A stretch of 64,000 nt of DNA from positions 28,582,001 through 28,646,000 of the forward strand of contig OZ320322.1 of NCBI GenBank assembly GCA_976226885.1, written 5' to 3'. Below the pieces are notes generated by a model. The model did no database searches. It was given only the letters and a program-made list of their open reading frames with translations, and was not told where the DNA came from. The position numbers and the translations under genes are program-made. Below, one piece after another: positions 1,402 through 63,650 of the stretch. Within the stretch, counting starts at the first letter, position 1, and each line of letters starts with the position of its first letter. The DNA comes from Iphione sp. A-MEVVRFRX5 (Eukaryota).

Positions 1402-4400
1402 AGTATCTGGGAGTGGTCTTCCTGGCACTATAGCAACTTACAGATGCAGAGCTGGTTTCAGTCTTCAAGGCCTTGCCACAAGAACTTGTGGTGCCAATGG
1501 TGTCTATAGTGGCCAGATACCACAGTGTCTACGTAGGTTTTGTATATAATTTAGTATTCCTTTATTTCATTGATAATATTCAGAGTCTTTTTTAGTGAAG
1601 ACAATGTGTATTTTGTTGTATTTCAACTGGTTTGAACTACAAACATTAAGTAATTAATAATGAAAAGTAATATTCTAATGGAGTTGAATTTGGAAGAGAA
1701 TGATTTGCATTATATAATGAAAAAACTTATTGTAGATGTTTAGAGCATTAAATATAAAAAATGGTCCCCTCAGGTCAACTCCATATGGAAATGTTAAATT
1801 CTGTTTACAGAACTTAACTGCCCTCCACCCATTGCTCCTCTGAATGGCTTTGTTCAGTAAGTCTGGCAACCTTTGGTTATATAGAGAACTAAGGCTTCTA
1901 TCTACATGAGAGAAATTCTACTCATGATTATATAATGAGCAGCTTGTGTACCCTTGTGTATATCTTATAGAGTACTTACTGTAAAATCTAAGTACAACTA
2001 ATCTTCTTTCATAATATTTATGAAGATTATGCTGCTAGATTCCTCACCTTGATAACACTGCATATGCATCTTAGAATCATTCAGTCTGTCACACAAGATG
2101 AGTCAATGAAGACCTGCCTTTCATCAGTTTCTCGTAGTCTCATAAGTTTAATCTCTTTCTCCCCAGTTTCTCAAGTTATAGCCTAATATTTTAATAATCT
2201 CTTGAGAGATTTCAATTTGCATGAGGTATTCTTGAAAGAGAAAGTCAAATATATAATTATTCTCATAGTTTGATACACAATGGAAAAATGAGTAAAAACC
2301 TATATGGAAAAGACTTTATGAAACCAGGAACAGCTCTGACGGCATGAGTGGTTGTAGGTACATTGTTTTTCTTTTGGCAGTAAATAGTAAGAAGGACAGG
2401 TAAAGGTGACAAGAGAAGAGTAAGGATGTGAATGTGGGTGTCATGGAGATCATTAGGAGGGTTACAAGGGGATCTGTAAGATAATGCATTCAGAGGAACA
2501 GAACTTGTTCCATTATAATGAAAGTTGATGGAGCTATCAACGAACATTAGAAGGATGCTAAGAGAAGTATAAGATTATGGATTCAGGACACAAGAGTGCT
2601 AATAGATATAAGAAAGCAGGGTGATGGAGATAGTTCTCAGAATATGAACGTGAGCGTTGGGGTTGTCTGTGGGAATGTGGAGAATACTATGAGAGGAGTG
2701 AAGATGTGGTCACTGAGCACAGGTGTGTTAGTAGACACCAGAAGTTCCCTGAGGATGTGATTGCTGGGTGAGGCTGTTAGTAACAGAAAAATCAAAGCTA
2801 CTCACTTAAGTGTGCTCCTGGGATAACTGCATACAGAATGAAGTAGATAGTTTATCAAGGTGGTCCCTGGCAAAAATGTTCACTCTATTTGTATCCTCTC
2901 ATATTTGATTTATCTAGCTTGAACAGCTATTTCTAATCTAATACTAGTAATGCAGAGCAATTTCACACTTCTTCATACTTAATGTCATAATATGTAAGCT
3001 GTCATTGCTATTAAATACATCAAATACAACTAGGATAGTATTAAATGTTTTAATTCAACCTATAATTTAAAGTTTTATACTGGGAATAATCTGAGTGCAC
3101 AGCATTTGATTAGTTCTTCCTCTTATATTGTCTTGAAACTTTGGAGATTTTCTATGTAGGGATTTCATTACTAGTACATTCATGTGGTCTTAAGCTTATC
3201 ATCAGTGCTGGCATTGACACTCTGTGTGTTTCATAGTTATTTCTGTACCTGTGATAACCTTGCAGATGTCATAATGATGTTCCTGCCTATATATATATGC
3301 TTAATTGGTAGTACTGTAGTGATGATTATGACTTAGCATATGACCTCTACACACTATGGTAAACTATTCTAAATATGAATTTCATGAACACATATTATTT
3401 TTTGTAGAAAATGTGTGATGTTGTTACTTCCTTGCTTTCCTTGATAACTATTAGTCTAAGTTGGTTTGATATCTTATTTAATCACAGTTTTTTTACCTGT
3501 ATTGATGAATCCAAGCTCTCAGTTGTACTTTATTTCATTTATGTGGACAGAGTATCTGGGAGTGGTCTTCCTGGCACTATAGCAACTTACAGATGCAGAG
3601 CTGGTTTCAGTCTTCAAGGCCTTGCCACAAGAACTTGTGGTGCCAATGGTGTCTATAGTGGCCAGATACCACAGTGTCTACGTAGGTTTTGTATATAATT
3701 TAGTATTCCTTTATTTCATTGATAATATTCAGAGTCTTTTTTAGTGAAGACAATGTGTATTTTGTTGTATTTCAACTGGTTTGAACTACAAACATTAAGT
3801 AATTAATAATGAAAAGTAATATTCTAATGGAGTTGAATTTGGAAGAGAATGATTTGCATTATATAATGAAAAAACTTATTGTAGATGTTTAGAGCATTAA
3901 ATATAAAAAATGGTCCCCTCAGGTCAACTCCATATGGAAATGTTAAATTCTGTTTACAGAACTTAACTGCCCTCCACCCATTGCTCCTCTGAATGGCTTT
4001 GTTCAGTAAGTCTGGCAACCTTTGGTTATATAGAGAACTAAGGCTTCTATCTACATGAGAGAAATTCTACTCATGATTATATAATGAGCAGCTTGTGTAC
4101 CCTTGTGTATATCTTATAGAGTACTTACTGTAAAATCTAAGTACAACTAATCTTCTTTCATAATATTTATGAAGATTATGCTGCTAGATTCCTCACCTTG
4201 ATAACACTGCATATGCATCTTAGAATCATTCAGTCTGTCACACAAGATGAGTCAATGAAGACCTGCCTTTCATCAGTTTCTCGTAGTCTCATAAGTTTAA
4301 TCTCTTTCTCCCCAGTTTCTCAAGTTATAGCCTAATATTTTAATAATCTCTTGAGAGATTTCAATTTGCATGAGGTATTCTTGAAAGAGAAAGTCAAATA

Positions 4401-7400
4401 TATAATTATTCTCATAGTTTGATACACAATGGAAAAATGAGTAAAAACCTATATGGAAAAGACTTTATGAAACCAGGAACAGCTCTGACGGCATGAGTGG
4501 TTGTAGGTACATTGTTTTTCTTTTGGCAGTAAATAGTAAGAAGGACAGGTAAAGGTGACAAGAGAAGAGTAAGGATGTGAATGTGGGTGTCATGGAGATC
4601 ATTAGGAGGGTTACAAGGGGATCTGTAAGATAATGCATTCAGAGGAACAGAACTTGTTCCATTATAATGAAAGTTGATGGAGCTATCAACGAACATTAGA
4701 AGGATGCTAAGAGAAGTATAAGATTATGGATTCAGGACACAAGAGTGCTAATAGATATAAGAAAGCAGGGTGATGGAGATAGTTCTCAGAATATGAACGT
4801 GAGCATTGGGGTTGTCTGTGGGAATGTGGAGAATACTATGAGAGGAGTGAAGATGTGGTCACTGAGCACAGGTGTGTTAGTAGACACCAGAAGTTCCCTG
4901 AGGATGTGATTGCTGGGTGAGGCTGTTAGTAACAGAAAAATCAAAGCTACTCACTTAAGTGTGCTCCTGGGATAACTGCATACAGAATGAAGTAGATAGT
5001 TTATCAAGGTGGTCCCTGGCAAAAATGTTCACTCTATTTGTATCCTCTCATATTTGATTTATCTAGCTTGAACAGCTATTTCTAATCTAATACTAGTAAT
5101 GCAGAGCAATTTCACACTTCTTCATACTTAATGTCATAATATGTAAGCTGTCATTGCTATTAAATACATCAAATACAACTAGGATAGTATTAAATGTTTT
5201 AATTCAACCTATAATTTAAAGTTTTATACTGGGAATAATCTGAGTGCACAGCATTTGATTAGTTCTTCCTCCTATATTGTCTTGAAACTTTGGAGATTTT
5301 CTATGTAGGGATGTCATTATTTGGACATTCATGTGGTGTTAAGCTTATCATCAGTGCTGGCATTGACACTCTGTGTGTTTCATAGTTATTTCTGTACCTG
5401 TGATAACCTTGCAGATGTCATAATGATGTTCCCGCCTATATATATATGCTTAATTGGTAGTACTGTAGTGATGATTATCACTTAGCATACGACCTCTACA
5501 CACTATGGTAAACTATTCTAAATATGAATTTCATGAACACATATTATTTTTGTAGAGAATGTGTGATGTTGTTACTTCCTTGCTTTCCTTGATAACTATT
5601 AGTCTAAGTTGGTTTGATACCTTATTTAATCATAGTTTTTTATCTGTATTGATGAATCCAAGCTCTCAGTTGTACTTTATTTCATTTATGTGGACAGAGT
5701 ATCTGGGAGTGGTCTTCCTGGCACTATAGCAACTTACAGTTGCAGAGCTGGTTTCAGTCTTCAAGGCCTTGCCACAAGAACTTGTGGTGCCAATGGTGTC
5801 TATAGTGGCCAGATACCACAGTGTCTACGTAGGTTTTGTATATAATTTAGTATTCCTTTATTTCATTGATAATATTCAGAGTCTTTTTTAGTGAAGACAA
5901 TGTGTATTTTGTTGTATTTCAGCTGGTTTGAAGTAGAAATATTTAGTTATTTATAATGGAAGGCAATGTTCTAATGATTGCAATAGGATGACTTACATTA
6001 TAAATGAAGTGACTTACTGTAGATGTTTAGAGCATTAAATATAAAAAATGGTCCCCTCTGGTTGACTGCATATGGAAATGTTAAATTCTGTTTTACAGAA
6101 CTTAACTGCCCTCCACCCATTGCTCCTCTGAATGGCTTTGTTCAGTAAGTCTGGCAACCTTTGGTTATATAGAGAACTAAGGCTTCTATCTACATGAGAG
6201 AAATTCTACTCATGATTATAATAATGAGCAGCTTTTGTACCCTTGTGTATATCTTATAGAGTACTTACTGTAAAATCTAAGTACAACTAATCTTCTTTCA
6301 TAATATTTATGAAGATTATGCTGCTACATTCCTCACCTTGATAACACTGCATATGCATTTTAGAATCATTCAGTCTGTCACACAAGATGAGTCAATGAAG
6401 TCCTGCCTTTCATCGGTTTCTTGTAGTCTCATAAGTTTAATCTCTTTCTCCCCAGTTTCTCAAGTTATAGCCTAATATATGTTAATAATCTCTTGAGAGA
6501 TTTCAATTTGCATGAGGTATTCTTAAAAGAGAAAGTCAAATATATAATTATTCTCATAGTTTGATACACAATGGAAAAATGAGTAAAAACCTATATGGAA
6601 AAGACTTTATGAAACCAGGAACAGCTCTGACTGCAGGAGTGTTTATAGGTACATTGTTTTTCTTTTGGCAGTAAATAGTAGGAAGGACATATAAAGGTGA
6701 CAAGAGAAGAGTAAGGATGTGAATGTGGGTGTCATGGAGATCATTAGGAGGGTTACAAGGGGATCTCTAAGATAATGCATTCAGAGGAACAGAACTTGTT
6801 CCATTATGATGAAAATTGATGGAGCTGTCAACGAACATTAGAAGGATGCTAAGAGAAGTATAAGATTATGGATTCAGGACACAAGAGTGCTAATAGATAT
6901 AAGAAAGCAGGGTGATGGAGATAGTTCTTAGAACATGAATGTGAGCATTGGGGTTGTCTGTGGGAATGTGGAGAATACTATGAGAGGAGTGAAGATGTGG
7001 TCACTGAGCACAGGTGTGTTAGTAGACACCAGAAGTACCCTGAGGATGTGATTGCTGGGTGAGGCTGTTAGTAACAGAAAAATCAAAGCTACTCACTTAA
7101 GTGTGCTCCTGGGATAACTGCATACAGAATGAAATAGATAGTTTATCAAGGTAGTCACTAGCAAAATGTTCATTCTATTTGTATCCTCTCATATTTGTTT
7201 TGTCTAGCTTAAAAAAACTATTTCTGATCTAAGACTAGTAATGCAGAGCAATTTCACACTCCTCATACTTAATGTCATAATATGTGAGCTGTCATTGCTA
7301 TTAAATACATCAAATACAACTAGGATAGTATTAGATGTTTTAATTCAACCTATAATTTAAAGTTTTATATGGGCAATAATCTGAGTGCACAGCATTTGAT

Positions 7401-9657
7401 TAGTTCTTCCTCTCATATTGTCTTGAAACTGTGGAGATTTTCTGTGTAGGGATTTCATTATTTGGACATTCATGTGATCTTAAGCTTATCATCAGTGCTG
7501 GCATTTACACTCTGTGTGTTTCATAGTTATTTCTGTACCTGTGATAACCTTGCAGATGTCATAATGATGTTCCCGCCTATATATATATGCTTAATTGGTA
7601 GTACTGTAGTGATGATTATCACTTAGCATATGATCTCTATACACTATGGTAAACTATTCTAAATATGAATTTCATGAACACATATTATTTTTTTGTAGAG
7701 AATGTATGATGTTGTTACTTCCTTGCTTTCCTTGATAACTATTAGTCTAAGTTGGTTTGATATCTTATTTAATCATAGTTTTTTTATCTGTATTGCTGAA
7801 TCCAGGCTCTCAGTTGTACTTTATTTCATTTATGTGGACAGAGTATCTGGGAGTGGTCTTCCTGGCACTATAGCAACTTACAGTTGCAGAGCTGGTTTCA
7901 GTCTTCAAGGCCTTGCCACAAGAACTTGTGGTGCCAATGGTGTCTATAGTGGCCAGATACCACAGTGCCTTCGTAGGTTTTGTATATAATTTAGTATTCC
8001 TTTATTTCCTTGATAATATTCAGAGTCTTTTTTTGTGAAGACAATGTGTATTTTGTTGTATTTCAGCTGGTTTGAAGTAGAAATATTTCATAATTAATAA
8101 TGGAAGGCAATGTTCAAATGATTGCAAGAGGATGACTTACATTATTAAATAAGGAGTCCTATTGTTTACAGCATTAAATATATAAAATGGTCCCCTCAGG
8201 TTGACTGCATATGGAAATGTTAAATTCTGTTTTACAGAACTTAACTGCCCTTCACCCATTGCTCCTCTGAATGGCTTTGTTCAGTAAGTCTGGCAACCTT
8301 TGGTTATATAGAGAACTAAGGCTTCTATTTACATGAGAGAAATTCTACTCTTGATCATATAATGAGCAGCTTGTGTATCCTTTTATTTATCTCATAAGTT
8401 ACTTGCCATAATATCTAGGGACAACTGATCTTCTTTTATGATATTTATAAAGATTATGCTGCTACATTCTGCCCTTTGATAACTCTGCATTTGATTAATT
8501 CCGCCAAAAGATGTACCAGCGGTTTTCCCTGGGACTATTAAAAACTACAGGAAGAAATAATTTTATAGTGCTAAAAAAATTGTGACAGCTTCCTCATGAG
8601 CCCTAGACCAAGCCATAGCAAAAAAGAAGTAAAATATCAATTGAAATTTAATTTACACCGCAAAAACACCATCCCAGAGATTACATTTTGGTACATCTGT
8701 TGGTGGAATCAGTCATATGCATTTTAGAATCATTCAGTCTGTCACCCAAGATGAATCCATCTAGATCAGTCTTTGATTAGCTGCTAAAAGTCTAATAAAG
8801 ACAATCCCTTTCTTTCTTAGTTTGTCAAGTTATGGCTAAATATCTCAATGATCACTTGAAAAAATTCACTTGATATCTATTATTCTTGAAAGAGAAAGTG
8901 AAAATATGATTGTTCTCATTGTTCAATACACAACAGAAAAATGGGATTGCAGGGTGATGGAGATAGTTCCCAGAACCTGAAAGTGAGCTTTGGGTTGTCT
9001 GGGGGAATGTGGAGGATGCTAGGAGAGGTGTGAGAATATGATCAAAGAGTATAGGGGTGTTAGTAGGCACCAGAAGAACCCTGAGAGAAGTGTGATTGCT
9101 GGGTGAGGCAGTTAGTTACAGAAAAATGAAAGCTGCTGATTTGTCTGACAGATTCTCATCTTAGATTTCACAGGACTTATGTTTGCTCCTGGGATAACTG
9201 CATACAGAAGTGAAGTAGATAGTTCACCATGATGGCACCTGGCAAAATGTTCACTCTATTTGCATTCTCTTATATTTAATTTATCTACTTTAAACAGTCA
9301 TTTTCAATCTAGCACTAATAATGCAAAGCAATTTCATTCTTCCTTATAATTAATGTCATAATATGTATGTTATCTTTACTATAAAATACATCAAATACAA
9401 CTATGATTAGTATTAAATTTTTTACTTTAACCTACACTTTAATGTCTTAAAGTGGCAATAATCTGAGTACACAACAATTGATGAGTTCTTCCTCTTATAT
9501 TGTCTTGAAACTATGGCGAATTTCTATGCAGTGATTTCATTACTAGTATATTAATGTGCTTTTCAGCTTATCATCAGTGCTGGCATTTACACTCTGTGTG
9601 TTTCATAGTTATTTCTGTACCTGTGATAACCTTGCAGATGTCATAATGATGTTCCCG

Positions 9658-9690
<33 letters not shown>

Positions 9691-12600
9691 TTAATTGGTA
9701 GTACTGTAGTGATGATTATCACTTAGCATATGATCTCTATACACTATGGTAAACTATTCTAAATATGAATTTCATGAACACATATTATTTTTTTGTAGAT
9801 AATGTGTGATGTTGTTACTTCCTTGCTTTCCTTGATAACTATTAGTCTAAGTTGGTTCGATATCTTATTTAATCATGGGATTTTTAAAATATTGATGAAT
9901 ACAAGCTCTCAGTTGTACTTCATTTCATTCATGTGGACAGAGTATCTGGGAGTGGTCTTCCTGGCACTATAGCAACTTACAGTTGCAGAGCTGGTTTCAG
10001 TCTTCAAGGCCCTGCCACAAGAACTTGTGGGGCCAATGGTGTCTATAGTGGCCAGATGCCACAGTGCCTTCGTAGGTTTTGTATATAATTTAGTATTTCT
10101 TCATTTCCTTAGTAATATTAAGGGTGGTTCTTGTTTAACAAAGTGTTTTTTTGGTATTTCATCTGGTTTAAAGTAGAAATGTTAAGTAATTAGTAATGTC
10201 TGACCATGGTCCCATATAGTTGGTGTTGTCAGAGATGAATTTGCATTATTCTGAAATAGTTATCCTAGATGTAAAGATAAGACAATATATACAAATGTTC
10301 CCTTAGTTTTGCTCCATCTTAAAATTTTAACTTCTGTTTCACAGGACTTGGCTGTCCTAGACCTAATGCTCCTCAGAATGGTTTTGTGGAGTAAGTCTAG
10401 CAACTTTGGTCATACAGAGAGCTAAGGCTTCTATGTAAATTTGACTAATTCTATTCTTTATTACATAATAAAGAGCTTTGTATCCTGGTACATGATGTGC
10501 AATGCTATTGCCTTAAAATTGAAGGGCAGTTTTGCTTCTTCCATAATACCTCTGAAGGTTATACTGCTGCTTTCTGAAACCTTGATAACTCTACTGATGC
10601 ATTTTAGGATTGCTCAATCTGACACCTAAGATGAGTCCATCCAGATCACTCTTTGATCAGTACCTAGTAATTTGATGAAGAAAATCCCCTTTTTCTCTTG
10701 AGATTTATGGAGAAGAGCTACATCTCAAATAATAGCCTAGCTTCTCAGTGATTAAACTTAACATATCAATTCTTATAAAGCATTCTTGTCAGAGAAATTA
10801 TATAATTGTTCTCATAGTTAGTGCCATGCTATCAATGTGATTACTATTGTATTAAAGGTGAAAATAGGTAAGGTTAGTGAAATATCTTTTATTACACCTG
10901 AACTTTGCAGTTACAAATCGACATAATTATAGCAAAGCATTGTCATGCATCTGACATTTACAGCATTTGCTGAAGGCAGAGGACTTCTATGTCGTTATGT
11001 TCGTACGAGTATAGGGATATATTCTAAAGCTTGTCAGACATGCTGGTCTTTATATTCTTAATGTTCCATTATTATCCTTGTTACTGTGTAAAGATTGCAG
11101 ATGTTATAATAGTCTTGCTGTTCATATTTATGCTATTTTTAAGACAGTATTAAGTATACTTCTAAATTAAAACTTTTCATTTATAATATGAACTTTCTGT
11201 CCTTTAGTAAACTATTAATCTGACTTGGATTAATAACCGACTACTTCATGAGTTTTCTAATCATATTGATGAATTAGGGCTCTGCATTACATTTTATATC
11301 ATTCATATGGACAGAGTATCTGGGACTGGTCTTCCTGGCACTAAAGCAACTTACAGCTGCAGTGCTGGATTTGCCCTTCAAGGAAGTCCAAAAAGAATAT
11401 GTGGTGCCAATGGTGTCTATAGTGGCCAGATGCCACAGTGCATTCGTCTATCTACTGGTGATTAGATATTCTTCAATACAAATGTCAATGTGTAAAATCC
11501 CTCTCAATAAAGACCAAATCTTTTACTTTTGTTATGTAGGACTTGAAGGAGAAATTATTAGTGATTACTTATACAAAGACATTCTTTCATCAAGTTATTC
11601 TTGCAAGAGATTAACACATATTAATCTATGAAAGAAATCATTTCTTAAATTTAAAGCAGATGCAATGGTGAATGTTTACCAATACTGTACTTGTCCTTCA
11701 GTACTTTGAAATGTTAACTTATGTTTTACAGCAATTAACTGTCCTCGACCCAATCCTCCTGAAAATGGTATTGTTGAGTAAGTTTGGCAGTGTTTAGTTA
11801 TGTCTTTCAATGTAAAGTTCTAAATACAAAAACAAATTTTTCTTGAATTAGAGGGTAACATTATTCTGATTTACAATGCAAAAAGATGTTCCATTTTAGA
11901 CCATTATCTACAATACACTTGCCTCAATTAAAAATGTCACTTTGACCTTTCCCAAGATATAAATACATATGTATATATAAGGATCATCCTTTAACTTTCA
12001 AAACATCAATATCATTGCTCACATTTTCTTACTGTTAACTATGACTCCTAAGATGAATCAATGAAAATATTTGCTGGATCAGTGTGAAAGTTTTTTTATT
12101 ATGAAATCTCCCTCTTGTATGAAGATCTGTAACAAAGATGATCTCTGTAAAAGCTCAGTACCTCATTTACAACTTTCAACATATCACAGGTTTGAAAATA
12201 ACATTTGAAAGACAGGAGAAAAATTAGATTTGTGTCCTTTCTGATTAAAATAGTAATATACTACACGGCCTTATAAAACATGCTCATTTATTCAACCCAA
12301 TTGACTACTCTGACTATAAGTGCCACTTTTACTCAGTGACTACTTATTTACTACAGTATTATCTATCTTCATTATTACTAACACGATATGTGTCTAAGTA
12401 TTGCTACTTGAAGATAAAAGTACCTAGGATTATCATCAATTCTTTATCCTCTGACTTGAACATTCAAGTCATGCATTGGTAATAATCTCAGTACAGAGTT
12501 TCACTGGGACTCATTTTCATGGATTTGAGGAAAGGCAGACAATTTCTATGTATTTAGTTGAGAACTATTATGCTGATATATTATGGAATTTGTCAAGCAA

Positions 12601-47800: not shown

Positions 47801-50800
47801 TGCGTTCCTTACCTGCGTTCGGGTTGGAGGCCAACTGCGGTATGACGGCAACCCTCCAGTATGTGTCGGTGAGTAAGATAAACAGAAGTTTCATAATTTC
47901 GGCAGTTTTCACAAGTATGACAGTGTACTCCGCTCTTTGTTTTATCGCCCAAAAGGGCGCCACCCTATACTATTGTTCAGTTCTAGGGGTAGTGTGAGTG
48001 TCCACTGAGACTTAGCAATCTGGGTACAGTTAAAGCAAATATTTTATTGAAGTTCTGTGTTAAAAATATATTACGTGAGTTATTTATATTAACATACGTC
48101 ATTACCCCTTTCAGGGCCATGAGAACGGCAATAGGGCTGTGGTATGCATAAATGCGCTCTCGTTTTAGGGCCAGGTATACATTTATGCATAAACAAAATA
48201 TTCTTTAGAAATTCAACTAACCACATTACTGCTCCGAAATATTATTTACTCTGAGCAGATGAACAGTTCTCTTCATGATGTGACTAAAAAGGAGTTATAG
48301 CAAGGTAATTAGAGACATAATCTTACCTTCAAAGCATTCTGTAGTCCTTCAAATAATGAGCCAAACCTTTTACTCTTTGCTTGAGAGAATGATCGTTAAA
48401 ACGTTAACAGAGCTAGTTTGGGTACATTATATGATAACTGAGTAATAATGTTTCATAGATCCTTACCAACCGTATTGTGTCTAGAAGATTTTAATCAATA
48501 AAGACAGGTCATTTGGCCATGTCCTATTGTGTTATCTCTGTTACACACACATTCACACACATATATACATGCATATATCTATACATTTATGCATGCTGTA
48601 TGTACTGGAGACTTGGGATTCTTCTTCATTTTGGGAGTTAAGCTAAATCCATTCAGGAGGAAGGCCATACATACAGTCAAGCCTATGTCAGCTGGATTTC
48701 TGGTCACTGAGGACCGTAGGTCGTCAGCGCGGAACTAGTAGCTCGACCTTTATTGCCCTACGCATCACCCAAAGGTGGTTAGGATTAACCACTATGCACA
48801 GAAATTCGGTTGACAATATCAATGTAGTAAAACTATTACAGGGCTATGCGCATCTAGAATCCGCTGTGATATGGTTTATTCCGTGAGCTGGGTAAAGATA
48901 TGTGCTGTTACAATGATAACAGCCTCAGAGTGGCAGGAATCCGGTATTGCGGGGCCAGTTGTCGTTGGCTGACTGTTTATATTTATATACACAGAGATAG
49001 GCCTAGGGGAATGATTAAGTAACGGTAAGTAATTAATTTCATGGAATAATCATCCAGATAACTATACCAATGTATGCAAAGGTACAAGACGTGTTGGCTC
49101 TGGGCCCATGGGCCTGGAGACCGACCCCTGCTCTATGTTCATGCTCCTGCACTTCGATGCTAATCAAGTAGACCAACCGAAGAAACCCCCCTGATAGAGA
49201 ACAAAAGTGGTGAGTTAAGGCTCACCTGTTACACTGCAGTGCTATCTTGCTGACTGCTAGCGAGTTTGTGCTCAAAGGAGTCTTAACCCCACTAGGCAAT
49301 GCCACCTACCGTAGCCTTAGGGGTTATTATATTTGCCTAATCTGCTGCTGTACTTCAGCCTTCGTATAACTGTACCAAAATAAGAAGAGCGCACCAGTAT
49401 ATGTGTTGGTCGAACGCCTATAGGCCCGGATGCTTACACCTCAAGACCAAACAAACTGGAGTCTCGATGGGGGCACCTGTCCTGTCGCAGAAGGAAACCG
49501 GTTTACTTGACCTCAAGCCTTTAGTTCATGATTTTAGAAAGATGACTGTTTGCCATTCAGCGAGAGTGCCCGCCTGCTATTTCTCAGTAGAGCTCGGTGC
49601 CCTGATTGCTCAGTTCTCACTGCTAAAGAGCAGCTCTTTGAGACTTTTTACGTTAGAATACCACTTTCCAAGGGTATCATACAACTTGGTATAACAAAGA
49701 CACATCTGTAGATAGGGTTTTTTAAGAGTTCTTAAGCATCTGTGGGATTTAATTGCTACTACCCCACGCTCTACTCCATTAGCGTTCAATATGACAGTAC
49801 ATCAGGCAACATTTGTGAGTCTTCCTTACTGGCCTGTTTAACATTCACGTCTGCACACCTCCAAGGATGCTTCCTTCTTGCATCCTTGTGATGTACAAGA
49901 ATCATTCCAATGTTTTGTTAACCCCCTAAGCATAGCAGTATGCTCTGCACCCAGGTGAATGTTCTCTGCCTTACAAGCCACTGCCACATCGTAAGGGAGA
50001 ATACCACATGGTGGCCCTAGTAGGAAGGTGGTGCTCATATTTGGCTGGCTGTTTGCCAGAATATCGACGTTGATAACCTTGTCTGCCATATACCTGAATT
50101 GGACCGAGTAGTGGTTCACGCCCCAATTCCCCTTAGCTAGGGTATCTGTCGTGTACCAGCAGCTGTACACCAGCTCTCCATGATGACTTGTCTGTCAAAT
50201 AATACACTCTTGTGTCCTCCATTGTTGTGACCACTTTTCCCCCCTTCTGGTGTTTGGTACGGGCCGCTATCGGCACCAGGTCCATATTCTATGACTGTTT
50301 GCTGTCTGTCCACTAGCTGGCTTGCTCGACCTTCCCGAGCGACTACTCCAGCAGCTGTTGCTGGTACAACTGGGTAATCCCCAACTGTTGCTAGTCTTTT
50401 TTTGGCGAACTTTGGGCCTGTCATGCCCATCACTGCTTGGAGGTAAGTGGGGATTCCTGCTAAGTCCGCCCTCTCTAACTGAGTCCTGATCACCAAAGAC
50501 AACAAAACTTGTCGCTTACTGCTCGGCTGGTATCCGTGTCTCTGTCACTGCTGCAACCATGATCCCTGATTCCCCTGTTTCTTCCACTTACTCTAGCATC
50601 TTAGTCCGGGCTGCCATTTGTACACCTGGGCCACAGCTCAGGTGTTAACCGTGTAAATGTCCGCAACCCCGTTGCTTTGGACGTTCAGCCCGTTGCTAGC
50701 TGTGCCATTCAAGTGTTCTGTCTGCTTTCTGAATCTAAAACTTCTTGTCGACGCTTTAAGCGCAGCATTTCCCGATCCTCTTCTTCTTCCTCCGTATCCA

Positions 50801-62589: not shown

Positions 62590-63650
62590 CGTGCGTGCGC
62601 GTTGTTGTTAGTCTGCCGGATCCCCTCTTTGACAATAGAGACAACGGAGCCGGTTTGAAGATCGACGCCTTCATCCTGCATGTGGCAGAGCATTCTAATA
62701 TGCAATGGTTTTCAAACATGGCCATCTAACGCATCCTTGCACACGAATACACCGAACCCTCACACAGCCATTCATTCACTTTCTTCCACGAAAAATACAT
62801 TTAAAGTATGGCATTGATGAATCGGAATTGATTCTGATTGTGTAAACCATCGGTTTTAAAACTGCAAGACATGATATATGCGCGAGAATGACTGTGTCCT
62901 TTCTCTTTGTCTCGGTGTTCGGAATGGATCTGTCTGTGTCTTTGTTTGTCCGTCTTTCTGTCTTTCTGCATGTGTATGTGTGTATGTATGTACGTACGTA
63001 CGTACGCACGTCTGGTGGACTGGACGTGATAATGACAAGGTGTGGACTGCACCAGTCGCCTGCCGACTGGCCTTGACACGTTGGCTGACCTACCCCCGGA
63101 GTCAGACACGGCCTATGAGTCTTCCTTCACTCTGCCATGCCCGTTCGGCGCCACCCCAGCGAACGTGACGGTGACTTGCAGGGCCTCCGGTTTATGGGGC
63201 TTTTCCGACAGCTGCCGTAGTAAGTGCCCCTATGCACCGTGCCTCTGCCTCCAACAACTCGTTAATTCAGATATTGTGCCATTCTGGAGCCAAAACCGTC
63301 TACATAGGTGAAAATGGGTCTAAGTTCGTTTCGATACTCAGATTCTTCGTATTCTAATTCGGTTAAGCATTCGTACATCGATATCTCAAGGTAGCATGCA
63401 CCTTGTGTGGCTGGACCATTCAGGTGCGATTTGCCCCACGTGTAGAACATCCCTCGTGATTAGACGTTGTTCGGTGACTTGCCATAAATCATAGCCCTGT
63501 TTACAGATGCGCCAGCTTGCCCGGTACGTGAGAATCCCCCTATCCCGTGTGGAAACATGCCCGACCTGTGTACTGATAACATTCAATGTCGGTTCACTCA
63601 GCGGTGCTGCTTTGACGGCTGCCGCCGGACCTGCTCGCCGGCCGATCCGG
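1402..63650 (+). CDS. Partial multi-exon gene (no start or stop in window) for a large modular extracellular protein: Sushi x16 - Kunitz - Sushi x18 - Kunitz - Sushi x2 - WAP; about 2310 aa in window
   Basis: 69 hand-derived AG/GT exons join without an in-frame stop (6932 nt = 1+3x2310+1): 1402-1532, 1811-1856, 3551-3681, 3960-4005, 5698-5828, 6099-6144, 7842-7972, 8238-8283, 9941-10071, 10345-10390, 11315-11457, 11732-11777, 13122-13252, 13535-13580, 14269-14411, 14676-14721, 16128-16258, 16568(or 16556)-16613, 17410-17540, 17771-17816, 25150-25280, 25537-25582, 26724-26854, 28291-28336, 29125-29255, 29388-29433, 30059-30189, 30766-30811, 31531-31661, 32555-32600, 33055-33185, 34602-34772, 36231-36282, 36532-36662, 37418-37469, 37652-37782, 38209-38260, 38504-38634, 39190-39241, 39866-39996, 40466-40517, 40791-40921, 41372-41423, 41681-41811, 42275-42326, 42599-42729, 43589-43643, 43801-43931, 44552-44603, 44784-44914, 45350-45401, 45630-45760, 46346-46531, 47518-47563, 47732-47868, 51627-51672, 52247-52386, 53055-53234, 53683-53728, 55246-55376, 55785-55961, 57082-57130, 57924-58039, 59509-59682, 60073-60255, 61382-61430, 62389-62522, 63040-63219, 63507-63650. 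Joining them into a single transcript is inferred; there are no RNA data. Confidence 0.88.
8492..8715. mobile_element. 224-bp MITE with 26-bp imperfect TIRs, present in one repeat unit only
   Basis: TGATTAATTCCGCCAAAAGATGTACC vs the reverse complement of GGTACATCTGTTGGTGGAATCAGTCA match at 22/26. Sister units show the empty site ctgcatatgc (e.g. about 2058-2067). Confidence 0.8.
9660..9688. repeat. (TA)n microsatellite, expanded in one repeat unit
   Basis: About 14 TA units here versus about 5 at the homologous position in sister units (e.g. about 1139-1149). Confidence 0.95.
11446..16258 (+). repeat. Higher-order duplication of a two-Sushi cassette (about 11446-13252 vs about 14400-16258)
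   Basis: Short exons 11732 and 14676 are identical. Introns 11778-13121 and 14722-16127 are collinear and highly similar. The offset is 2944 bp, rising to 3006 bp after a local indel near 16020-16090. Confidence 0.92.
20050..20460. repeat. Degenerate 70-90-bp tandem repeat, about 5 units
   Basis: Core GTGTTTGTAGAGGG..GATGTCCCCACACCTGCAGGAG recurs at about 20077, 20157, 20229, 20319 and 20390. Confidence 0.85.
20557..20662 (-). repeat. Ngaro split direct repeat B2 (106 bp core)
   Basis: Identical to 20870-20975. Similarity extends with 2 mismatches to the CATT at 20546. Confidence 0.97.
20731..20862 (-). repeat. Ngaro split direct repeat A2 (132 bp)
   Basis: Identical to 24281-24412. Confidence 0.97.
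20870..20975 (-). repeat. Ngaro split direct repeat B1 (106 bp core)
   Basis: Identical to 20557-20662. Confidence 0.97.
20985..21935 (-). pseudogene. Ngaro tyrosine recombinase interrupted by an in-frame TGA at 21501-21503
   Basis: FYTGF*QSEL (expected G.LR.SE), then KWSKT, HSLRRTGA and GNWSSNAYYNY. The two track ORFs are in the same frame on either side of one TGA. Confidence 0.93.
21969..23852 (-). pseudogene. Ngaro pol (reverse transcriptase + RNase H) with one frameshift at about 23385-23388
   Basis: N-terminal part LNIEAW..LLQYGFPIGY..NHPSATDFP switches frame to QHVSEYIRNEI..GPF. RT motifs RRIITDMS, DIARAYKN, PFGARCSS, YLDD, WLG are present. RNase H motifs VDAC, IEAVN and ADALSR are present, but the expected cDN reads CNN. 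Confidence 0.92.
23807..23859 (-). promoter_or_regulatory. Putative -1 ribosomal frameshift signal (A AAA AAC + 5-nt spacer + stem-loop) at the gag/pol overlap
   Basis: The heptamer at 23859-23853 is correctly phased in gag, and a -1 shift enters the open pol frame. GGCACCTCTG (23847-23838) pairs with CAGAGGTACC (23816-23807) at 9 of 10 positions. Confidence 0.65.
23847..24275 (-). pseudogene. Ngaro gag, C-terminal part only (Cys/His zinc-finger region)
   Basis: Contains W..Y.FD...RNEISW and VCQAYSMAPC...HICSFC...HNHTLSVC. It abuts A1 directly and has no in-frame ATG upstream, so the 5' gag is probably deleted. Confidence 0.75.
24281..24412 (-). repeat. Ngaro split direct repeat A1 (132 bp)
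   Basis: Identical to 20731-20862. Confidence 0.97.
24849..25032. mobile_element. Degenerate Tc1/pogo-like MITE remnant with internal 14-bp inverted repeat
   Basis: AACTAGGGACACCC (24865-24878) and GGGTGTCCCTAGTT (24910-24923) form a perfect inverted repeat. The right end reads ..AAGGTCCTACTG. Ends are approximate. Confidence 0.45.
25150..33185 (+). CDS. Six more diverged split-exon Sushi domains (long exons 25150, 26724, 29125, 30059, 31531, 33055; short exons 25537, 28291, 29388, 30766, 32555)
   Basis: Example: CAPPTRPANGAIR/VNGGGVLGSTVDYNCNTGFELRGPRTRTCTATGAYDGQDPVC. Same 46+131-nt exon geometry and phases as array A. Confidence 0.9.
25944..26283. mobile_element. PIF/Harbinger-type (Tourist-like) MITE, copy 1
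   Basis: Ends GGCCTAAA..TGTGTTTCCGGTAAC and GTTACCGGAAACACA..TTTAGGCC, flanked by a TAA duplication (25941-25943, 26284-26286). Confidence 0.85.
27061..27661. mobile_element. 601-bp PIF/Harbinger-type MITE with internal minisatellites
   Basis: TIR GGCCCGGTTTCCTTAC(A/C)TGC matches at 19/20, with TTA target duplication (27058-27060, 27662-27664). Internally there is an approximately 62-bp x2 repeat plus cagtcaaaa and ccccaatgca repeats. Confidence 0.87.
28525..28735. repeat. 31-bp minisatellite with palindromic core CAGGCAAATTTGCCTG
   Basis: Cores at 28525, 28556, 28587, 28618 and 28649, decaying to about 28735. Confidence 0.85.
34602..34772 (+). CDS. Kunitz/BPTI domain exon 1 (six Cys, P1 = Phe)
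   Basis: LRCLQRRDEGPCFQFLRRYFFNPLTRRCEQFIYGGCRGNLNRFRDIRECQRICAGT has canonical Kunitz Cys spacing and FIYGGC.GN.N.F. Phase 1-1 exon with ctag/GTATAA sites. Confidence 0.95.
35519..35856. mobile_element. PIF/Harbinger-type MITE, copy 2 (same family as 25944-26283)
   Basis: TAA-GGCCCTAAAA..TGTGTTTCC ... GTTACCGGAAACACAGC..TTAGGCC-TAA. The interior is similar to copy 1 and in the same orientation. Confidence 0.82.
36231..42729 (+). CDS. Sushi array B: 7 tandem units (52-nt + 131-nt exons)
   Basis: Consensus MTDSCPSVSNPLNGRVL/VEGVVLPGTIVEFACDAGYQLQGPSSILCLLNLVYNDDPPSC. Acceptors c/tacag and catag, donors GTAAGT. Confidence 0.92.
43589..45760 (+). CDS. Three split-exon Sushi domains (43589/43801, 44552/44784, 45350/45630)
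   Basis: Example: CPDVAAPVNGNRQ/ITGDRLPSSTVQFSCNEGYLLLGPTAIVCMLNFQYNQDPPIC. Phases are consistent. Confidence 0.88.
46346..46531 (+). CDS. Single-exon (unsplit) Sushi domain
   Basis: LDCGPLPTLPNVMGTWPQGTSTRYLATYSLLCQRGFLPEYVTAFCNATGMWEVSDTC; phase 1-1, ggcag/GTGAGC. Confidence 0.85.
47518..47868 (+). CDS. Split Sushi domain (47518-47563 + 47732-47868)
   Basis: CPPVRTPDRGSQR/QEGTGVNSRVVFSCDPGLQLQGPAFLTCVRVGGQLRYDGNPPVC. Confidence 0.87.
51627..52386 (+). CDS. Split Sushi domain (51627-51672 + 52247-52386)
   Basis: CPPVNTDRPLLQQ/SSSQGEIGSQIFFSCEQGFILVGPNVINCRLIQGRAQYDSPPPQC. Confidence 0.85.
53055..53234 (+). CDS. Single-exon (unsplit) divergent Sushi domain
   Basis: IDCGPLPAVANAADDWPENPARSHRDTHSVRCQPISSNVVISATCNEQGRWLLNGSC; phase 1-1, donor GTCAGC is weak. 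Confidence 0.78.
53683..55376 (+). CDS. Split Sushi domain (53683-53728 + 55246-55376)
   Basis: CQTLRTPRNGRFT/FLQGTGDLGSVARFECDRGYTLNGQATITCQENGWTGNEPVC. Confidence 0.88.
55785..55961 (+). CDS. Single-exon (unsplit) Sushi domain
   Basis: VDCGNELPVANIVGGNVADGQTSYQAVIRRQCLDGFMPETIVFTCTERAVWVTDQQC; gcag/GTAAGT. Confidence 0.85.
57082..58039 (+). CDS. Split Sushi domain (57082-57130 + 57924-58039)
   Basis: CPRINLPDQAVMQ/LVDEVIIEFSCNPGFDMLGPGRIICRNGTWTNQPPVC. Confidence 0.85.
59509..59682 (+). CDS. Single-exon (unsplit) Sushi domain
   Basis: VDCGPFPEQPNVVNPPSTPVTTFPVTYIFTCRSGLTPETYTVVCGEDGVWRPRGQC; donor GTTTCA is weak. Confidence 0.8.
60073..60255 (+). CDS. Kunitz domain exon 2, four-Cys (two-disulfide) variant
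   Basis: ICGFRMDAGMGDASLSRYYYNATAGTCLQFTYRGSGGNGNNFRDLLECQRTCAFT keeps C5, C30, C51, C55 and the Y..N, F.Y.G..GN.NNF motifs (BPTI numbering). C14 is Gly and C38 is Ser. Confidence 0.9.
61382..62522 (+). CDS. Split Sushi domain (61382-61430 + 62389-62522)
   Basis: CPMLSTPANGNRN/VLSGDGRPQTVVEFSCNPGYRLVGSQRLTCLSNFAWDFPQPTC. Confidence 0.88.
61969..62285. repeat. Degenerate minisatellite of about 30 bp (core AGATGAGACCTAGTT)
   Basis: About 10 imperfect copies of gatgagacc-like motifs. Confidence 0.7.
62543..62600. repeat. (TG)n followed by (TGCG)n microsatellite
   Basis: Seen directly just downstream of exon 62389-62522. Confidence 0.95.
63040..63219 (+). CDS. Single-exon (unsplit) Sushi domain
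   Basis: VDCTSRLPTGLDTLADLPPESDTAYESSFTLPCPFGATPANVTVTCRASGLWGFSDSC; acaag/GTAAGT. Confidence 0.82.
63507..63650 (+). CDS. WAP (four-disulfide core) domain exon, not translated in the ORF track
   Basis: APACPVRENPPIPCGNMPDLCTDNIQCRFTQRCCFDGCRRTCSPADP has 8 Cys in WAP spacing (CP..C..C.....C.....CC..GC...C). Sites tttacag/GTAATC, phase 1-1. Confidence 0.88.

What the first reader, a model, noticed from the sequence alone, without database searches (positions are those of the whole stretch)
1402..63650. Unrecognised domain architecture: (Sushi)16-Kunitz-(Sushi)18-Kunitz-(Sushi)2-WAP
SEEN: a very long CCP chain is punctuated by two Kunitz domains and a WAP domain, all as phase 1-1 modules. KNOWN: CCP chains are typical of complement regulators, selectins and SVEP1/CSMD. 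Kunitz+WAP pairs occur in protease inhibitors such as WFIKKN and eppin. I do not recognise a named protein that combines dozens of CCPs with both inhibitor folds, and no EGF, CUB, VWA or pentraxin exon was found in the window. INFERENCE: a lineage-specific scaffold that presents protease-inhibitor modules on a long rod, perhaps in complement-like immunity or barrier defence.
Basis: partly seen in the sequence, partly recalled or inferred. Interest (0 to 1): 0.75.

Follow-up and report, generated by a model that had tools for sequence, protein, structure and literature searches.

The report
Giant sushi-chain gene with inhibitor modules
The window holds the middle of one very large worm gene for a secreted protein, a chain of about 68 sushi (CCP) modules interrupted by three Kunitz and one or two WAP protease-inhibitor modules; this is an unusual but not unprecedented kind of mosaic.

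Summary
On the + strand, 74 exons with AG/GT borders join into an open frame of 2422 codons. Pfam confirms both Kunitz exons, the WAP exon and the CCP exons. Thirty-one CCPs are split by a phase-2 intron into a 46-55 nt exon and a ~131 nt exon. Seven are single-exon "DCG" CCPs that Pfam misses, but a profile search and a fold search place them as CCPs.

The gene runs well beyond the window. My 125-exon model spans 150.6 kb and 4365 codons: signal peptide, WAP-like module, 36 CCP, Kunitz, 20 CCP, Kunitz, 2 CCP, WAP, 10 CCP, Kunitz, short Cys-rich tail, stop. It has no membrane segment.

The architecture is only partly unrecognised. WAP followed by a CCP chain is the described LEV-9/Hasp pattern. 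I found no paper and no related protein with Kunitz modules inside a CCP chain, but I could not run a true architecture search. No RNA evidence was available, so the single-gene reading rests on structure alone, and function is inferred.

The scan had already noted the upstream part of this gene (s1-312058) and Kunitz-2 (s1-312048), both on this same DNA.

The parts
1..9940 (+). In-window part of a tandem array of a ~2149-bp genomic unit. Each unit holds one 131-nt and one 46-nt CCP exon. The array starts at window -9343.
   Evidence: Unit spacing is 2149, 2149, 2149, 2149, 2149, 2149, 2147, 2144 bp. Eight units are 96-100% identical over introns and exons, and three are 100% identical. The ninth is 79% identical.
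1402..33185 (+). CCP21-36 of the full model: 16 split CCP modules.
   Evidence: Large exons: 1402-1532, 3551-3681, 5698-5828, 7842-7972, 9941-10071, 11315-11445, 13122-13252, 14269-14396, 16128-16258, 17410-17540, 25150-25280, 26724-26854, 29125-29255, 30059-30189, 31531-31661, 33055-33185. Small exons: 1811-1856, 3960-4005, 6099-6144, 8238-8283, 10345-10390, 11732-11777, 13535-13580, 14676-14721, 16568-16613, 17771-17816, 25537-25582, 28291-28336, 29388-29433, 30766-30811, 32555-32600. Each small exon pairs with the next large one. All have AG/GT borders; small exons are phase 1 to 2 and large exons phase 2 to 1. Pfam Sushi E 2.6e-7 for 1403-1531. The donors at 11445 and 14396 are weak.
34602..34772 (+). 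Kunitz-1: single phase 1-1 exon, six Cys, P1 = Phe.
   Evidence: Pfam Kunitz_BPTI E 2.2e-20 over profile positions 1-53 of 53. Borders. Its closest Kunitz exon in the whole genome is Kunitz-3 of the same gene, at 54% identity.
35863..35943 (+). Decayed remnant of a large CCP exon, not part of the model.
   Evidence: Profile E 3.3e-6, but it has an internal deletion, no acceptor, and a stop just upstream and downstream.
36231..42729 (+). CCP37-43: seven split CCPs of one young subfamily, with Tyr in place of the consensus Trp.
   Evidence: Exon pairs: 36231-36282 + 36532-36662; 37418-37469 + 37652-37782; 38209-38260 + 38504-38634; 39190-39241 + 39866-39996; 40466-40517 + 40791-40921; 41372-41423 + 41681-41811; 42275-42326 + 42599-42729. 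Mean pairwise identity is 82%. Pfam Sushi E 1.5e-7.
43200..43379 (+). F1: single-exon 'DCG-type' CCP (CCP44).
   Evidence: Phase 1-1 with four Cys and a Trp. No Pfam hit. It is a member of the F profile, which matches Sushi domains elsewhere.
43589..43931 (+). CCP45, split: 43589-43643 + 43801-43931.
44185..44367 (+). F2: single-exon DCG-type CCP (CCP46).
   Evidence: No Pfam hit. The AlphaFold model has pLDDT 94.9. In an unbiased search of 48,161 chains its best matches are nearly all CCP modules, with Z 4.1-6.4, rmsd 2.0-3.0 A and 51-59 of 60 residues aligned.
44552..44914 (+). CCP47, split: 44552-44603 + 44784-44914.
45350..45760 (+). CCP48, split: 45350-45401 + 45630-45760.
46346..46531 (+). 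F3: single-exon DCG-type CCP (CCP49).
   Evidence: Pfam Sushi is below threshold at 17.4 bits, E 0.006, over profile positions 1-52 of 56.
47518..47868 (+). CCP50, split: 47518-47563 + 47732-47868.
51627..52386 (+). CCP51, split: 51627-51672 + 52247-52386.
53055..53234 (+). F4: single-exon DCG-type CCP (CCP52).
53683..55376 (+). CCP53, split: 53683-53728 + 55246-55376.
   Evidence: Pfam Sushi E 1.2e-11 for the large exon.
55785..55961 (+). F5: single-exon DCG-type CCP (CCP54).
   Evidence: Pfam Sushi is below threshold at 16.1 bits.
57082..58039 (+). CCP55, split: 57082-57130 + 57924-58039.
   Evidence: Pfam Sushi E 1.4e-8 for the large exon.
59509..59682 (+). F6: single-exon DCG-type CCP (CCP56).
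   Evidence: Pfam Sushi is below threshold at 16.6 bits.
60073..60255 (+). Kunitz-2: single phase 1-1 exon with four Cys only. Positions 14 and 38 in BPTI numbering are Gly and Ser, and P1 = Asp.
   Evidence: Pfam Kunitz_BPTI E 1.7e-17. Solved relatives include boophilin, the annelid inhibitor SmCI, TFPI and conkunitzin-S1 at E 3e-14. Cysteines were read from the sequence.
61382..62522 (+). CCP57, split: 61382-61430 + 62389-62522.
   Evidence: Pfam Sushi E 2.2e-10.
63040..63219 (+). F7: single-exon DCG-type CCP (CCP58).
   Evidence: Profile E 1.1e-8. No Pfam hit.
63507..63650 (+). WAP four-disulfide-core exon, phase 1-1, eight Cys.
   Evidence: Pfam WAP 25.5 bits against a cut-off of 20.8, E 1.7e-5. 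The nearest solved chain, nawaprin, matches only weakly at E 0.41. A phase-1 donor at 63650 leads on to ten more CCP exons.

Best explanation
The window is the middle of one very large gene for a secreted extracellular protein.

My model has 125 exons over 150.6 kb (window -74452 to 76133) and 4365 codons, about 458 kDa. Its order is: signal peptide, WAP-like 8-Cys module, 36 CCP, Kunitz-1, 20 CCP, Kunitz-2, 2 CCP, WAP, 10 CCP, Kunitz-3, a 55-residue 4-Cys tail, then stop.

Shown:
- the exon chain, the splice phases and the domain identities;
- the absence of any hydrophobic segment other than the signal peptide;
- growth of the chain by tandem duplication of a two-exon CCP cassette (46 + 131 nt), the youngest copies being 96-100% identical including their introns.

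Inferred:
- The CCP chain acts as a long semi-rigid rod or scaffold in the extracellular space, and displays inhibitor-type modules at fixed points along it.
- Kunitz-3 (six Cys, P1 Arg, P1' Ala) is the best candidate for a working trypsin-type serine-protease inhibitor.
- Kunitz-1 (six Cys, P1 Phe) would be a chymotrypsin-type inhibitor.
- Kunitz-2 (no 14-38 disulfide, P1 Asp) is more likely a binding module than an inhibitor.
- The Kunitz modules probably arose by duplication within the gene and spread by phase-1 exon shuffling.
- In overall plan the protein is a greatly expanded WAP + CCP-chain protein of the LEV-9/Hasp kind with Kunitz modules added.
For: Gene model:
- All 74 in-window exons have AG/GT borders and give an open frame.
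- The extended model of 125 exons has a coding length of 13098 nt, divisible by three, with a single stop at the very end. Its only non-canonical sites are five GC donors of the sequence GCAAGT.
- An AATAAA lies 230 nt after the stop.
- Cysteine bookkeeping is exact: 68 x 4 + 6 + 4 + 6 + 8 + 8 + 4 = 308.

One gene rather than several:
- Five of the six introns over 4 kb lie between the small and large exon of a split CCP, so half-domains sit on either side of each gap. This includes the intron with the retroelement at 17817-25149. The sixth follows the signal-peptide exon.
- The WAP exon lies only 287 nt after the preceding CCP exon.

Domain identities:
- Pfam.
- Fold of the atypical CCPs.
- The F-module profile hits Sushi-rich invertebrate proteins at the same residues that Pfam calls Sushi.

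Secretion: the only hydrophobic stretch is the N-terminal signal peptide.

Kunitz origin: the best genome-wide match of Kunitz-1 is Kunitz-3 (54% identity, E 6.5e-13), and Kunitz-2 is also listed.

Ongoing amplification.

LEV-9/Hasp pattern: PMC9083331.
Against: - No RNA or protein evidence of any kind. A word search with the Kunitz-2 exon found nothing, and the gene's own product is not among the library hits.
- Because all modules are phase-1 symmetric, an open joined frame would arise even if some exons are skipped or if there are internal starts. It is weak proof of a single transcript.
- The N-terminal WAP-like module reaches only 11.8 bits in Pfam (E 0.31).
- The signal-peptide exon was chosen by eye from a scan that also throws up many chance candidates.
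- Two large exons have poor donors (11445, 14396).
- Three 100% identical 2149-bp units could reflect an assembly problem.
- Inhibitory activity is inferred only from P1 residues and cysteine patterns.
Confidence: 0.6

Rival explanations
1. The locus is two or more transcription units. For example, there could be an upstream CCP-only gene, a middle gene, and a LEV-9/Hasp-like product (WAP, 10 CCP, Kunitz-3) made from an internal promoter or by alternative splicing.
For: - Symmetric phase-1 modules make any sub-chain readable.
- The CCPs fall into blocks of different type and age: an upstream Trp-type block, a Tyr-type block, a mixed old block, and single-exon CCPs after the WAP.
- WAP followed by about 10 CCPs is on its own the known LEV-9/Hasp plan.
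- Many signal-peptide-like ATG exons with phase-1 donors can be found by chance inside the locus.
Against: - Five of the six large introns separate the two halves of a split CCP, which ties the blocks together.
- Only 287 nt separate the WAP exon from the preceding CCP exon, and no convincing first exon lies there.
- No in-frame terminal exon or polyadenylation-type end was seen before 76133.
- There is one clean signal peptide at the 5' end and one stop at the 3' end.
Confidence: 0.2
2. It is the annelid counterpart of LEV-9/Hasp. On this reading it is a synaptic-cleft matrix protein that clusters acetylcholine receptors or anchors partner proteins through its CCPs, and the WAP and Kunitz modules are dispensable or are binding modules rather than protease inhibitors.
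For: - The N-terminal plan is signal peptide, 8-Cys WAP-like module, then CCP chain.
- Hasp has one WAP followed by up to 17 CCPs, and the LEV-9 WAP is dispensable for receptor clustering (PMC9083331).
- The protein is secreted and has no membrane anchor.
Against: - The N-terminal WAP is below Pfam threshold.
- It has 68 CCPs against 8-17, and three Kunitz modules that LEV-9/Hasp lack.
- Orthology by sequence could not be tested, because no LEV-9/Hasp sequence could be brought in.
- I could not test whether a simpler WAP + CCP gene exists elsewhere in this genome. Six other WAP exons exist, but their surroundings could not be fetched.
Confidence: 0.2
3. It is a humoral immune or barrier protein: a complement-regulator-like CCP chain carrying inhibitors against pathogen or clotting proteases. 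On this reading the cassette array varies in copy number under diversifying pressure.
For: - CCP chains are the hallmark of complement regulators, and all fold matches are to such modules.
- The inhibitor-type modules have different P1 residues (Phe, Asp, Arg).
- The tandem amplification is very recent.
Against: - There is no evidence of expression site or inducibility.
- The amplified copies are near-identical rather than diversified.
- The CCP fold alone shows no function.
- I did not examine complement components of this species.
Confidence: 0.12
4. Part of the array is an assembly artefact or a decaying gene, so the real protein is shorter than modelled.
For: - Three 2149-bp units are 100% identical.
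- There are decayed exon remnants at 35863-35943, near -30070 and near -49642.
- Two exons have weak donors.
Against: - The frame is intact through all 125 exons, with no stops and a fully paired cysteine count.
- The units differ slightly from one another in a graded way (96-100%), as expected of real tandem copies.
- The contig is 65 Mb and the stretches read contain no N.
Confidence: 0.08

Closest known systems
LEV-9 (C. elegans) and Hasp (Drosophila): secreted WAP + CCP-chain synaptic matrix proteins
   Same: Both are secreted, have a WAP-type module at the N-terminus followed by a chain of CCPs, and have no membrane anchor. This gene also has a second WAP that is followed by 10 CCPs.
   Different: This gene has 68 CCPs against 8-17, three Kunitz modules and an internal WAP. 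Its N-terminal WAP is below Pfam threshold. Sequence orthology and synaptic function were not tested.
SVEP1/polydom-like and other giant invertebrate Sushi proteins (e.g. Mercenaria XP_053403087, 54 Sushi + VWD; 'SVEP1-like' entries of bivalves, amphioxus and corals)
   Same: They share dozens of CCPs, including the DCG-type subclass. They are the best library matches of the F-module profile and are 25-31% identical to the model over long stretches.
   Different: None of the 155 fetched proteins has a Kunitz or WAP module. This gene has no VWA, EGF, pentraxin, VWD, CUB or SRCR module.
Kunitz + WAP proteins: WFIKKN/GASP, eppin, papilin-type proteins
   Same: They combine Kunitz and WAP inhibitor folds in one secreted protein assembled from phase-1 modules (PMC3427181 abstract, listed; the rest from general knowledge).
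   Different: Those proteins carry follistatin/Kazal, Ig, NTR or TSP1 modules and no CCP chain. Here the inhibitor modules are a small minority on a CCP rod.
SmCI (tri-Kunitz inhibitor of the annelid Sabellastarte magnifica), TFPI, boophilin, conkunitzin-S1
   Same: These are the best solved relatives of the Kunitz modules. SmCI matches Kunitz-3 at E 6e-31. Conkunitzin-S1 matches Kunitz-2 at E 3e-14 and, from general knowledge, also lacks the 14-38 disulfide.
   Different: They are small free inhibitors or toxins of one to three Kunitz domains, not modules embedded in a 458-kDa chain.
Regulators of complement activation (factor H, CR1, C4BP, DAF, Crry)
   Same: They share the CCP fold and chain-of-beads design. 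The split CCP exons with an intron after the second codon base recall the split CCPs of CR1/CR2/factor H genes (general knowledge). The fold matches are to these proteins.
   Different: Those are built of CCPs only or CCP plus membrane anchor, are vertebrate, and have no inhibitor modules. In 36 of the 68 CCPs here, Tyr replaces the consensus Trp.

Membership tests
Sushi/CCP/SCR domain (PF00084) | Pfam score over the gathering cut-off (20.7 bits) | tested here: met
   Large exons of split CCPs score 31-45 bits and match profile positions 20-56. Downstream single-exon CCPs score 30-39 bits over positions 1-56. Only a sample of exons was scanned. The rest were tied in with a profile built from the window (E 1e-10 to 1e-22).
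Sushi/CCP/SCR domain (PF00084), the seven single-exon 'F' modules | Pfam score over the cut-off | tested here: not met
   F1, F2, F4 and F7 have no Sushi hit. F3, F5 and F6 score 16-17 bits. hhalign against canonical CCPs of the same gene gives probability 5.6%.
Sushi/CCP/SCR domain, the seven 'F' modules | CCP fold with four Cys in CCP spacing and a conserved Trp | tested here: met
   Four Cys and the Trp are invariant. The F profile hits Sushi-rich proteins at residues that Pfam calls Sushi. The AlphaFold model of F2 has pLDDT 94.9. The top 50 of 48,161 chains are nearly all CCP modules, with Z 4.1-6.4, rmsd 2.0-3.0 A and 51-59 of 60 residues aligned. The Z values are modest, as expected for a 60-residue domain.
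Kunitz/BPTI (PF00014) | Pfam score over the cut-off (21 bits), full-length match | tested here: met
   Kunitz-1 scores 73 bits, Kunitz-2 63.8 bits and Kunitz-3 69.4 bits.
Kunitz/BPTI (PF00014) | Six cysteines forming the 5-55, 14-38 and 30-51 disulfides | tested here: inconclusive
   Kunitz-1 and Kunitz-3 have all six. Kunitz-2 has Gly14 and Ser38 and so keeps only two disulfides. It is a known natural variant of the fold rather than an exclusion.
WAP four-disulfide core (PF00095), internal module 63507-63650 | Pfam score over the cut-off (20.8 bits) and eight Cys | tested here: met
   It scores 25.5 bits at E 1.7e-5. The eight Cys include the C-x5-C-x5-CC core.
WAP four-disulfide core (PF00095), N-terminal module (window -67825 to -67661; L014:2175-2339) | Pfam score over the cut-off and eight Cys | tested here: inconclusive
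   It scores 11.8 bits at E 0.31. WAP is the only family listed, over profile positions 4-39 of 41. Eight Cys with the C-x5-C-x5-CC core are present. There was no useful solved relative.
LEV-9 / Hasp family | Signal peptide, one N-terminal WAP, then an uninterrupted chain of CCPs, with no other domain type | tested here: not met
   The signal peptide and CCP chain are present and the N-terminal WAP is doubtful. However, three Kunitz modules and a second WAP interrupt the chain. The family plan is taken from PMC9083331.
LEV-9 / Hasp family | Sequence orthology to LEV-9/Hasp, and localisation at cholinergic synapses | not testable with these tools
   No LEV-9/Hasp sequence could be obtained, and no expression data were available.
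SVEP1 / polydom | VWA, EGF, HYR and pentraxin modules together with CCPs | tested here: not met
   Every exon of the 125-exon model is a signal peptide, CCP, Kunitz, WAP or tail exon, and all 308 Cys are accounted for. The introns were not scanned exhaustively against Pfam.
WFIKKN / eppin / papilin (Kunitz + WAP proteins) | Kunitz and WAP together with follistatin/Kazal, Ig and NTR (WFIKKN) or TSP1 and Ig (papilin), or WAP + Kunitz alone (eppin) | tested here: not met
   Kunitz and WAP co-occur, but none of the other modules is present, and 68 CCPs are.

The most novel reading that the evidence does not exclude
A single 458-kDa secreted protein really is made from all 125 exons. On this reading it is a domain combination not yet described (CCP chain + Kunitz + WAP), restricted to an annelid lineage. 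Its CCP cassette array is still expanding and varies in copy number between individuals. It would work as a multivalent 'inhibitor rod' that positions three differently specific Kunitz modules and WAP modules some hundreds of nanometres apart in the matrix, the cuticle or the synaptic cleft.
Probability: 0.3. Interest if true: 0.6.

Novelty: new variant of a known kind. Interest (0 to 1): 0.45.

Why it matters
If the model holds, this is one of the longest CCP chains on record (68 modules). It would also be a clear live example of how such proteins grow, through a two-exon cassette copied in tandem, with units still 100% identical including their introns.

It would extend the WAP + CCP scaffold proteins, known from worm and fly synapses, with Kunitz modules of three different predicted specificities. 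That gives a concrete set of small domains to express and assay.

It also shows that a subclass of CCP modules (the DCG type) escapes Pfam's Sushi model, so CCP counts in automatic annotation of invertebrate genomes are likely too low.

It does not open a long-standing question. Mosaic extracellular proteins built from phase-1 modules are common in invertebrates.

Tried and rejected
- **Joined model.** It was assembled only inside sandbox scripts, for frame and cysteine bookkeeping and for a local comparison with the 155 fetched proteins. So no CDART/InterPro-style architecture search was done.
- **Word search with the Kunitz-2 exon**. No candidate was found. The tool only sees proteins of 33-105 residues for this query, so this says nothing about long relatives.
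- **Library search with the F-module profile**. It found 422 proteins, the best being generic Sushi-rich invertebrate proteins. There was no close orthologue and none of the listed hits had Kunitz or WAP. Only the best 150 are listed, so absence is not shown.
- **hhalign of F modules against canonical CCPs**. Not significant; the question was settled by fold instead.
- **Foldseek against PDB**. All E values were above 0.1 although the hits were all CCPs, so I used the exhaustive aligner.
- **Literature**. No paper describing Sushi and Kunitz in one protein was found. The Echinococcus paper mentions the two domains in separate proteins.
- **Neighbourhoods of the six other WAP exons** of the genome, to look for a simpler LEV-9/Hasp gene.
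- **Scan for internal signal-peptide exons**. It gave 65 mostly chance candidates and was uninformative.
- **Solved-structure search for the N-terminal WAP-like module**. It returned only a chance match.
- **Reading of the large ORFs at 20-24 kb as part of the gene.** Rejected: they belong to a retroelement in an intron.
Full report
**What the window is.** The window is eukaryotic DNA with 31-51% G+C and no N. It lies at G000:C22:28582001-28646000 in a 1.18-Gb genome of 89 contigs. I did not verify that. It is not human sequence.

**Checking the observation.**
- A regular-expression pass and then a profile built from the window found 32 + strand matches to a 3-Cys piece of a CCP, with E from 1e-6 to 1e-22. 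Nothing on the - strand scored below E 1.
- Each of these 'large' exons has a phase-2 acceptor and a phase-1 donor, mostly GTAAGT or GTAGGT.
- The missing first cysteine of each module lies on a tiny exon of 46-55 nt, phase 1 to 2, with a Cys-Pro-x-Pro...Asn-Gly motif. It sits 200-7300 nt upstream of its large exon.
- Seven further modules are single phase 1-1 exons of 174-186 nt that begin Asp-Cys-Gly.
- Two Kunitz exons and one WAP exon are also phase 1-1.
- Joined inside a script, the 74 exons all have AG/GT borders and read 2422 codons without a stop.
- The order is 16 CCP, Kunitz, 20 CCP, Kunitz, 2 CCP, WAP.
- Exon by exon, Pfam gives Kunitz E 2.2e-20 and 1.7e-17, WAP 25.5 bits (cut-off 20.8), and Sushi 31-45 bits for the CCP exons.

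**The seven atypical CCPs.**
- Pfam gives nothing for four of them and 16-17 bits for three. hhalign against canonical CCPs of the same gene is not significant.
- In this genome the profile of the seven finds only these seven exons.
- In the library of 1.84 billion representatives it finds 422 proteins. The best are long Sushi-rich invertebrate proteins such as Mercenaria XP_053403087 (54 Sushi + VWD) and various 'SVEP1-like' entries. The matched stretches coincide with what Pfam calls Sushi.
- An AlphaFold model of one Pfam-negative module has pLDDT 94.9.
- An exhaustive comparison with 48,161 solved chains returns almost only CCP modules: Crry, C1s, PAPP-A, factor H, DAF, CD46 and beta-2-glycoprotein I. 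Z is 4.1-6.4, rmsd 2.0-3.0 A, with 51-59 of 60 residues aligned.
- They are therefore CCPs of a DCG-type subclass that the Pfam model under-detects.

**The gene beyond the window.** The first CCP lacks its small exon and the WAP exon ends in a donor, so I fetched flanks.
- Downstream lie ten canonical single-exon CCPs (Pfam 30-39 bits). A third Kunitz follows (E 3e-19) on an exon that reads on through a 55-residue, 4-Cys tail to a stop at 76131-76133. An AATAAA lies 230 nt later.
- Further downstream there is a - strand ORF of 297 codons at 86869-87759 and a retroelement-like region at about 96-107 kb.
- Upstream lie 20 more split CCPs. The first is at about -66.4 kb, and there are none in the 94 kb before that.
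- Ahead of them is an 8-Cys exon with the WAP core spacing. Pfam lists WAP as its only family, but at 11.8 bits and E 0.31.
- At -74452 there is an ATG exon encoding a typical signal peptide that ends in a phase-1 donor.

**The full model.**
- It has 125 exons over 150.6 kb and 13098 coding nt, giving 4365 codons with one stop, at the end.
- The only non-canonical splice sites are five GCAAGT donors, in five tandem copies of one cassette.
- The product would be 458 kDa, with no hydrophobic segment apart from the signal peptide.
- It has 308 cysteines, exactly the sum expected from 68 CCPs, three Kunitz modules (6 + 4 + 6), two 8-Cys modules and the tail.
- In the 274 kb examined there are exactly three Kunitz exons and one Pfam-grade WAP exon.

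**One gene or several.** I have no RNA evidence. Because the modules are phase-symmetric, an open joined frame alone proves little.
- The stronger argument is that five of the six introns longer than 4 kb lie between the small and the large exon of a split CCP, so each gap has half a domain on either side. The sixth follows the signal-peptide exon.
- The WAP exon follows the previous CCP exon by 287 nt.
- There is one good signal peptide and one terminal exon.
- Internal promoters or exon skipping cannot be excluded. A scan for internal signal-peptide exons gave only noise.

**How the gene grew.**
- Window positions 1-9940 belong to a tandem array of a 2149-bp unit that starts at -9343. Eight units are 96-100% identical over exons and introns, and three are identical.
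- At protein level CCP16-24 are 98-100% alike, CCP3-8 are 84-96% alike and CCP37-43 about 82%. The region holding the F modules, Kunitz-2 and the WAP is old, at 11-54%.
- Decayed exon remnants lie at 35863-35943 and at two upstream sites.
- The Kunitz modules are 41-51% identical to each other. The closest Kunitz exon to Kunitz-1 in the whole genome is Kunitz-3, which points to duplication within the gene.

**What the modules suggest.**
- Kunitz-3 has six Cys and a Gly-Pro-Cys-Arg-Ala reactive loop (P1 Arg). Its best solved relative is SmCI, a tri-Kunitz inhibitor from an annelid, followed by TFPI.
- Kunitz-1 has six Cys and P1 Phe.
Conkunitzin-S1 is among its solved relatives.
- From general knowledge of the family, P1 Arg/Lys goes with trypsin-type targets and P1 Phe/Leu/Tyr with chymotrypsin-type targets. 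Loss of the 14-38 bridge is compatible with a stable fold but is often seen in non-inhibitory members.
- These functional statements are inference. Nothing here measures activity.

**Comparison with what is known.**
- The review PMC9083331 describes LEV-9, and Hasp as one WAP followed by up to seventeen CCPs. Both are secreted synaptic-cleft matrix proteins, and the LEV-9 WAP is dispensable for receptor clustering.
- The N-terminal plan of this gene, and again its WAP + 10 CCP segment, repeat that pattern. The pairing of WAP with a CCP chain is therefore not new.
- Kunitz with WAP is known from WFIKKN/GASP, eppin and papilin-type proteins, which have no CCP chain.
- I found no paper and no fetched protein with Kunitz modules inside a CCP chain.
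- This absence is weak evidence. The joined protein could not be searched, the word search is length-limited, and only 150 library hits are listed.

**Verdict.** The feature is best filed as a new variant of a known kind: a giant WAP + CCP scaffold protein that has acquired Kunitz modules. Interest is moderate.

Noticed in passing
window 17817-25149 (intron between the small and large exon of CCP31): A G+C-rich retroelement is inserted in the intron. The - strand ORF 21972-23495 has a reverse-transcriptase domain (Pfam RVT_1, E 2.8e-11).
   Followed up: partly
L005:1653-4229 (window -38347 to -35771, + strand), in the 11.5-kb intron of an upstream split CCP: There is an uninterrupted 859-codon ORF with low-complexity Ser/Thr/Pro repeats and no Pfam family. 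It is probably a mobile-element protein.
   Followed up: partly
window -49431, -48934, -48436, -46174, -45671 (L005/L008 region): Five tandem copies of the small CCP exon use a GC donor (GCAAGT) instead of GT. This is a GC-AG intron propagated by cassette duplication.
   Followed up: partly
G000:C4:41140591-41149690 (+): At least nine Kunitz exons lie in a row and are followed within about 40 nt by a WAP exon (33 bits). This looks like a separate multi-Kunitz + WAP gene of the papilin/WFIKKN/eppin kind.
   Followed up: no
whole model; window examples 1402-1532 and 36532-36662: In 36 of the 68 CCPs the consensus Trp between the third and fourth Cys is replaced by Tyr, and three CCPs have neither. 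This is characteristic of the two young amplified blocks.
   Followed up: partly
window 62523-62620 and 62880-63000: (TG)n / (GT)n-rich microsatellite stretches sit in the introns flanking F7. They give long Cys/Val pseudo-ORFs in translation.
   Followed up: no
window 86869-87759 (- strand; L012): A 297-codon ORF rich in hydrophobic segments lies on the opposite strand about 10 kb past the end of the gene. It is probably the next gene.
   Followed up: no
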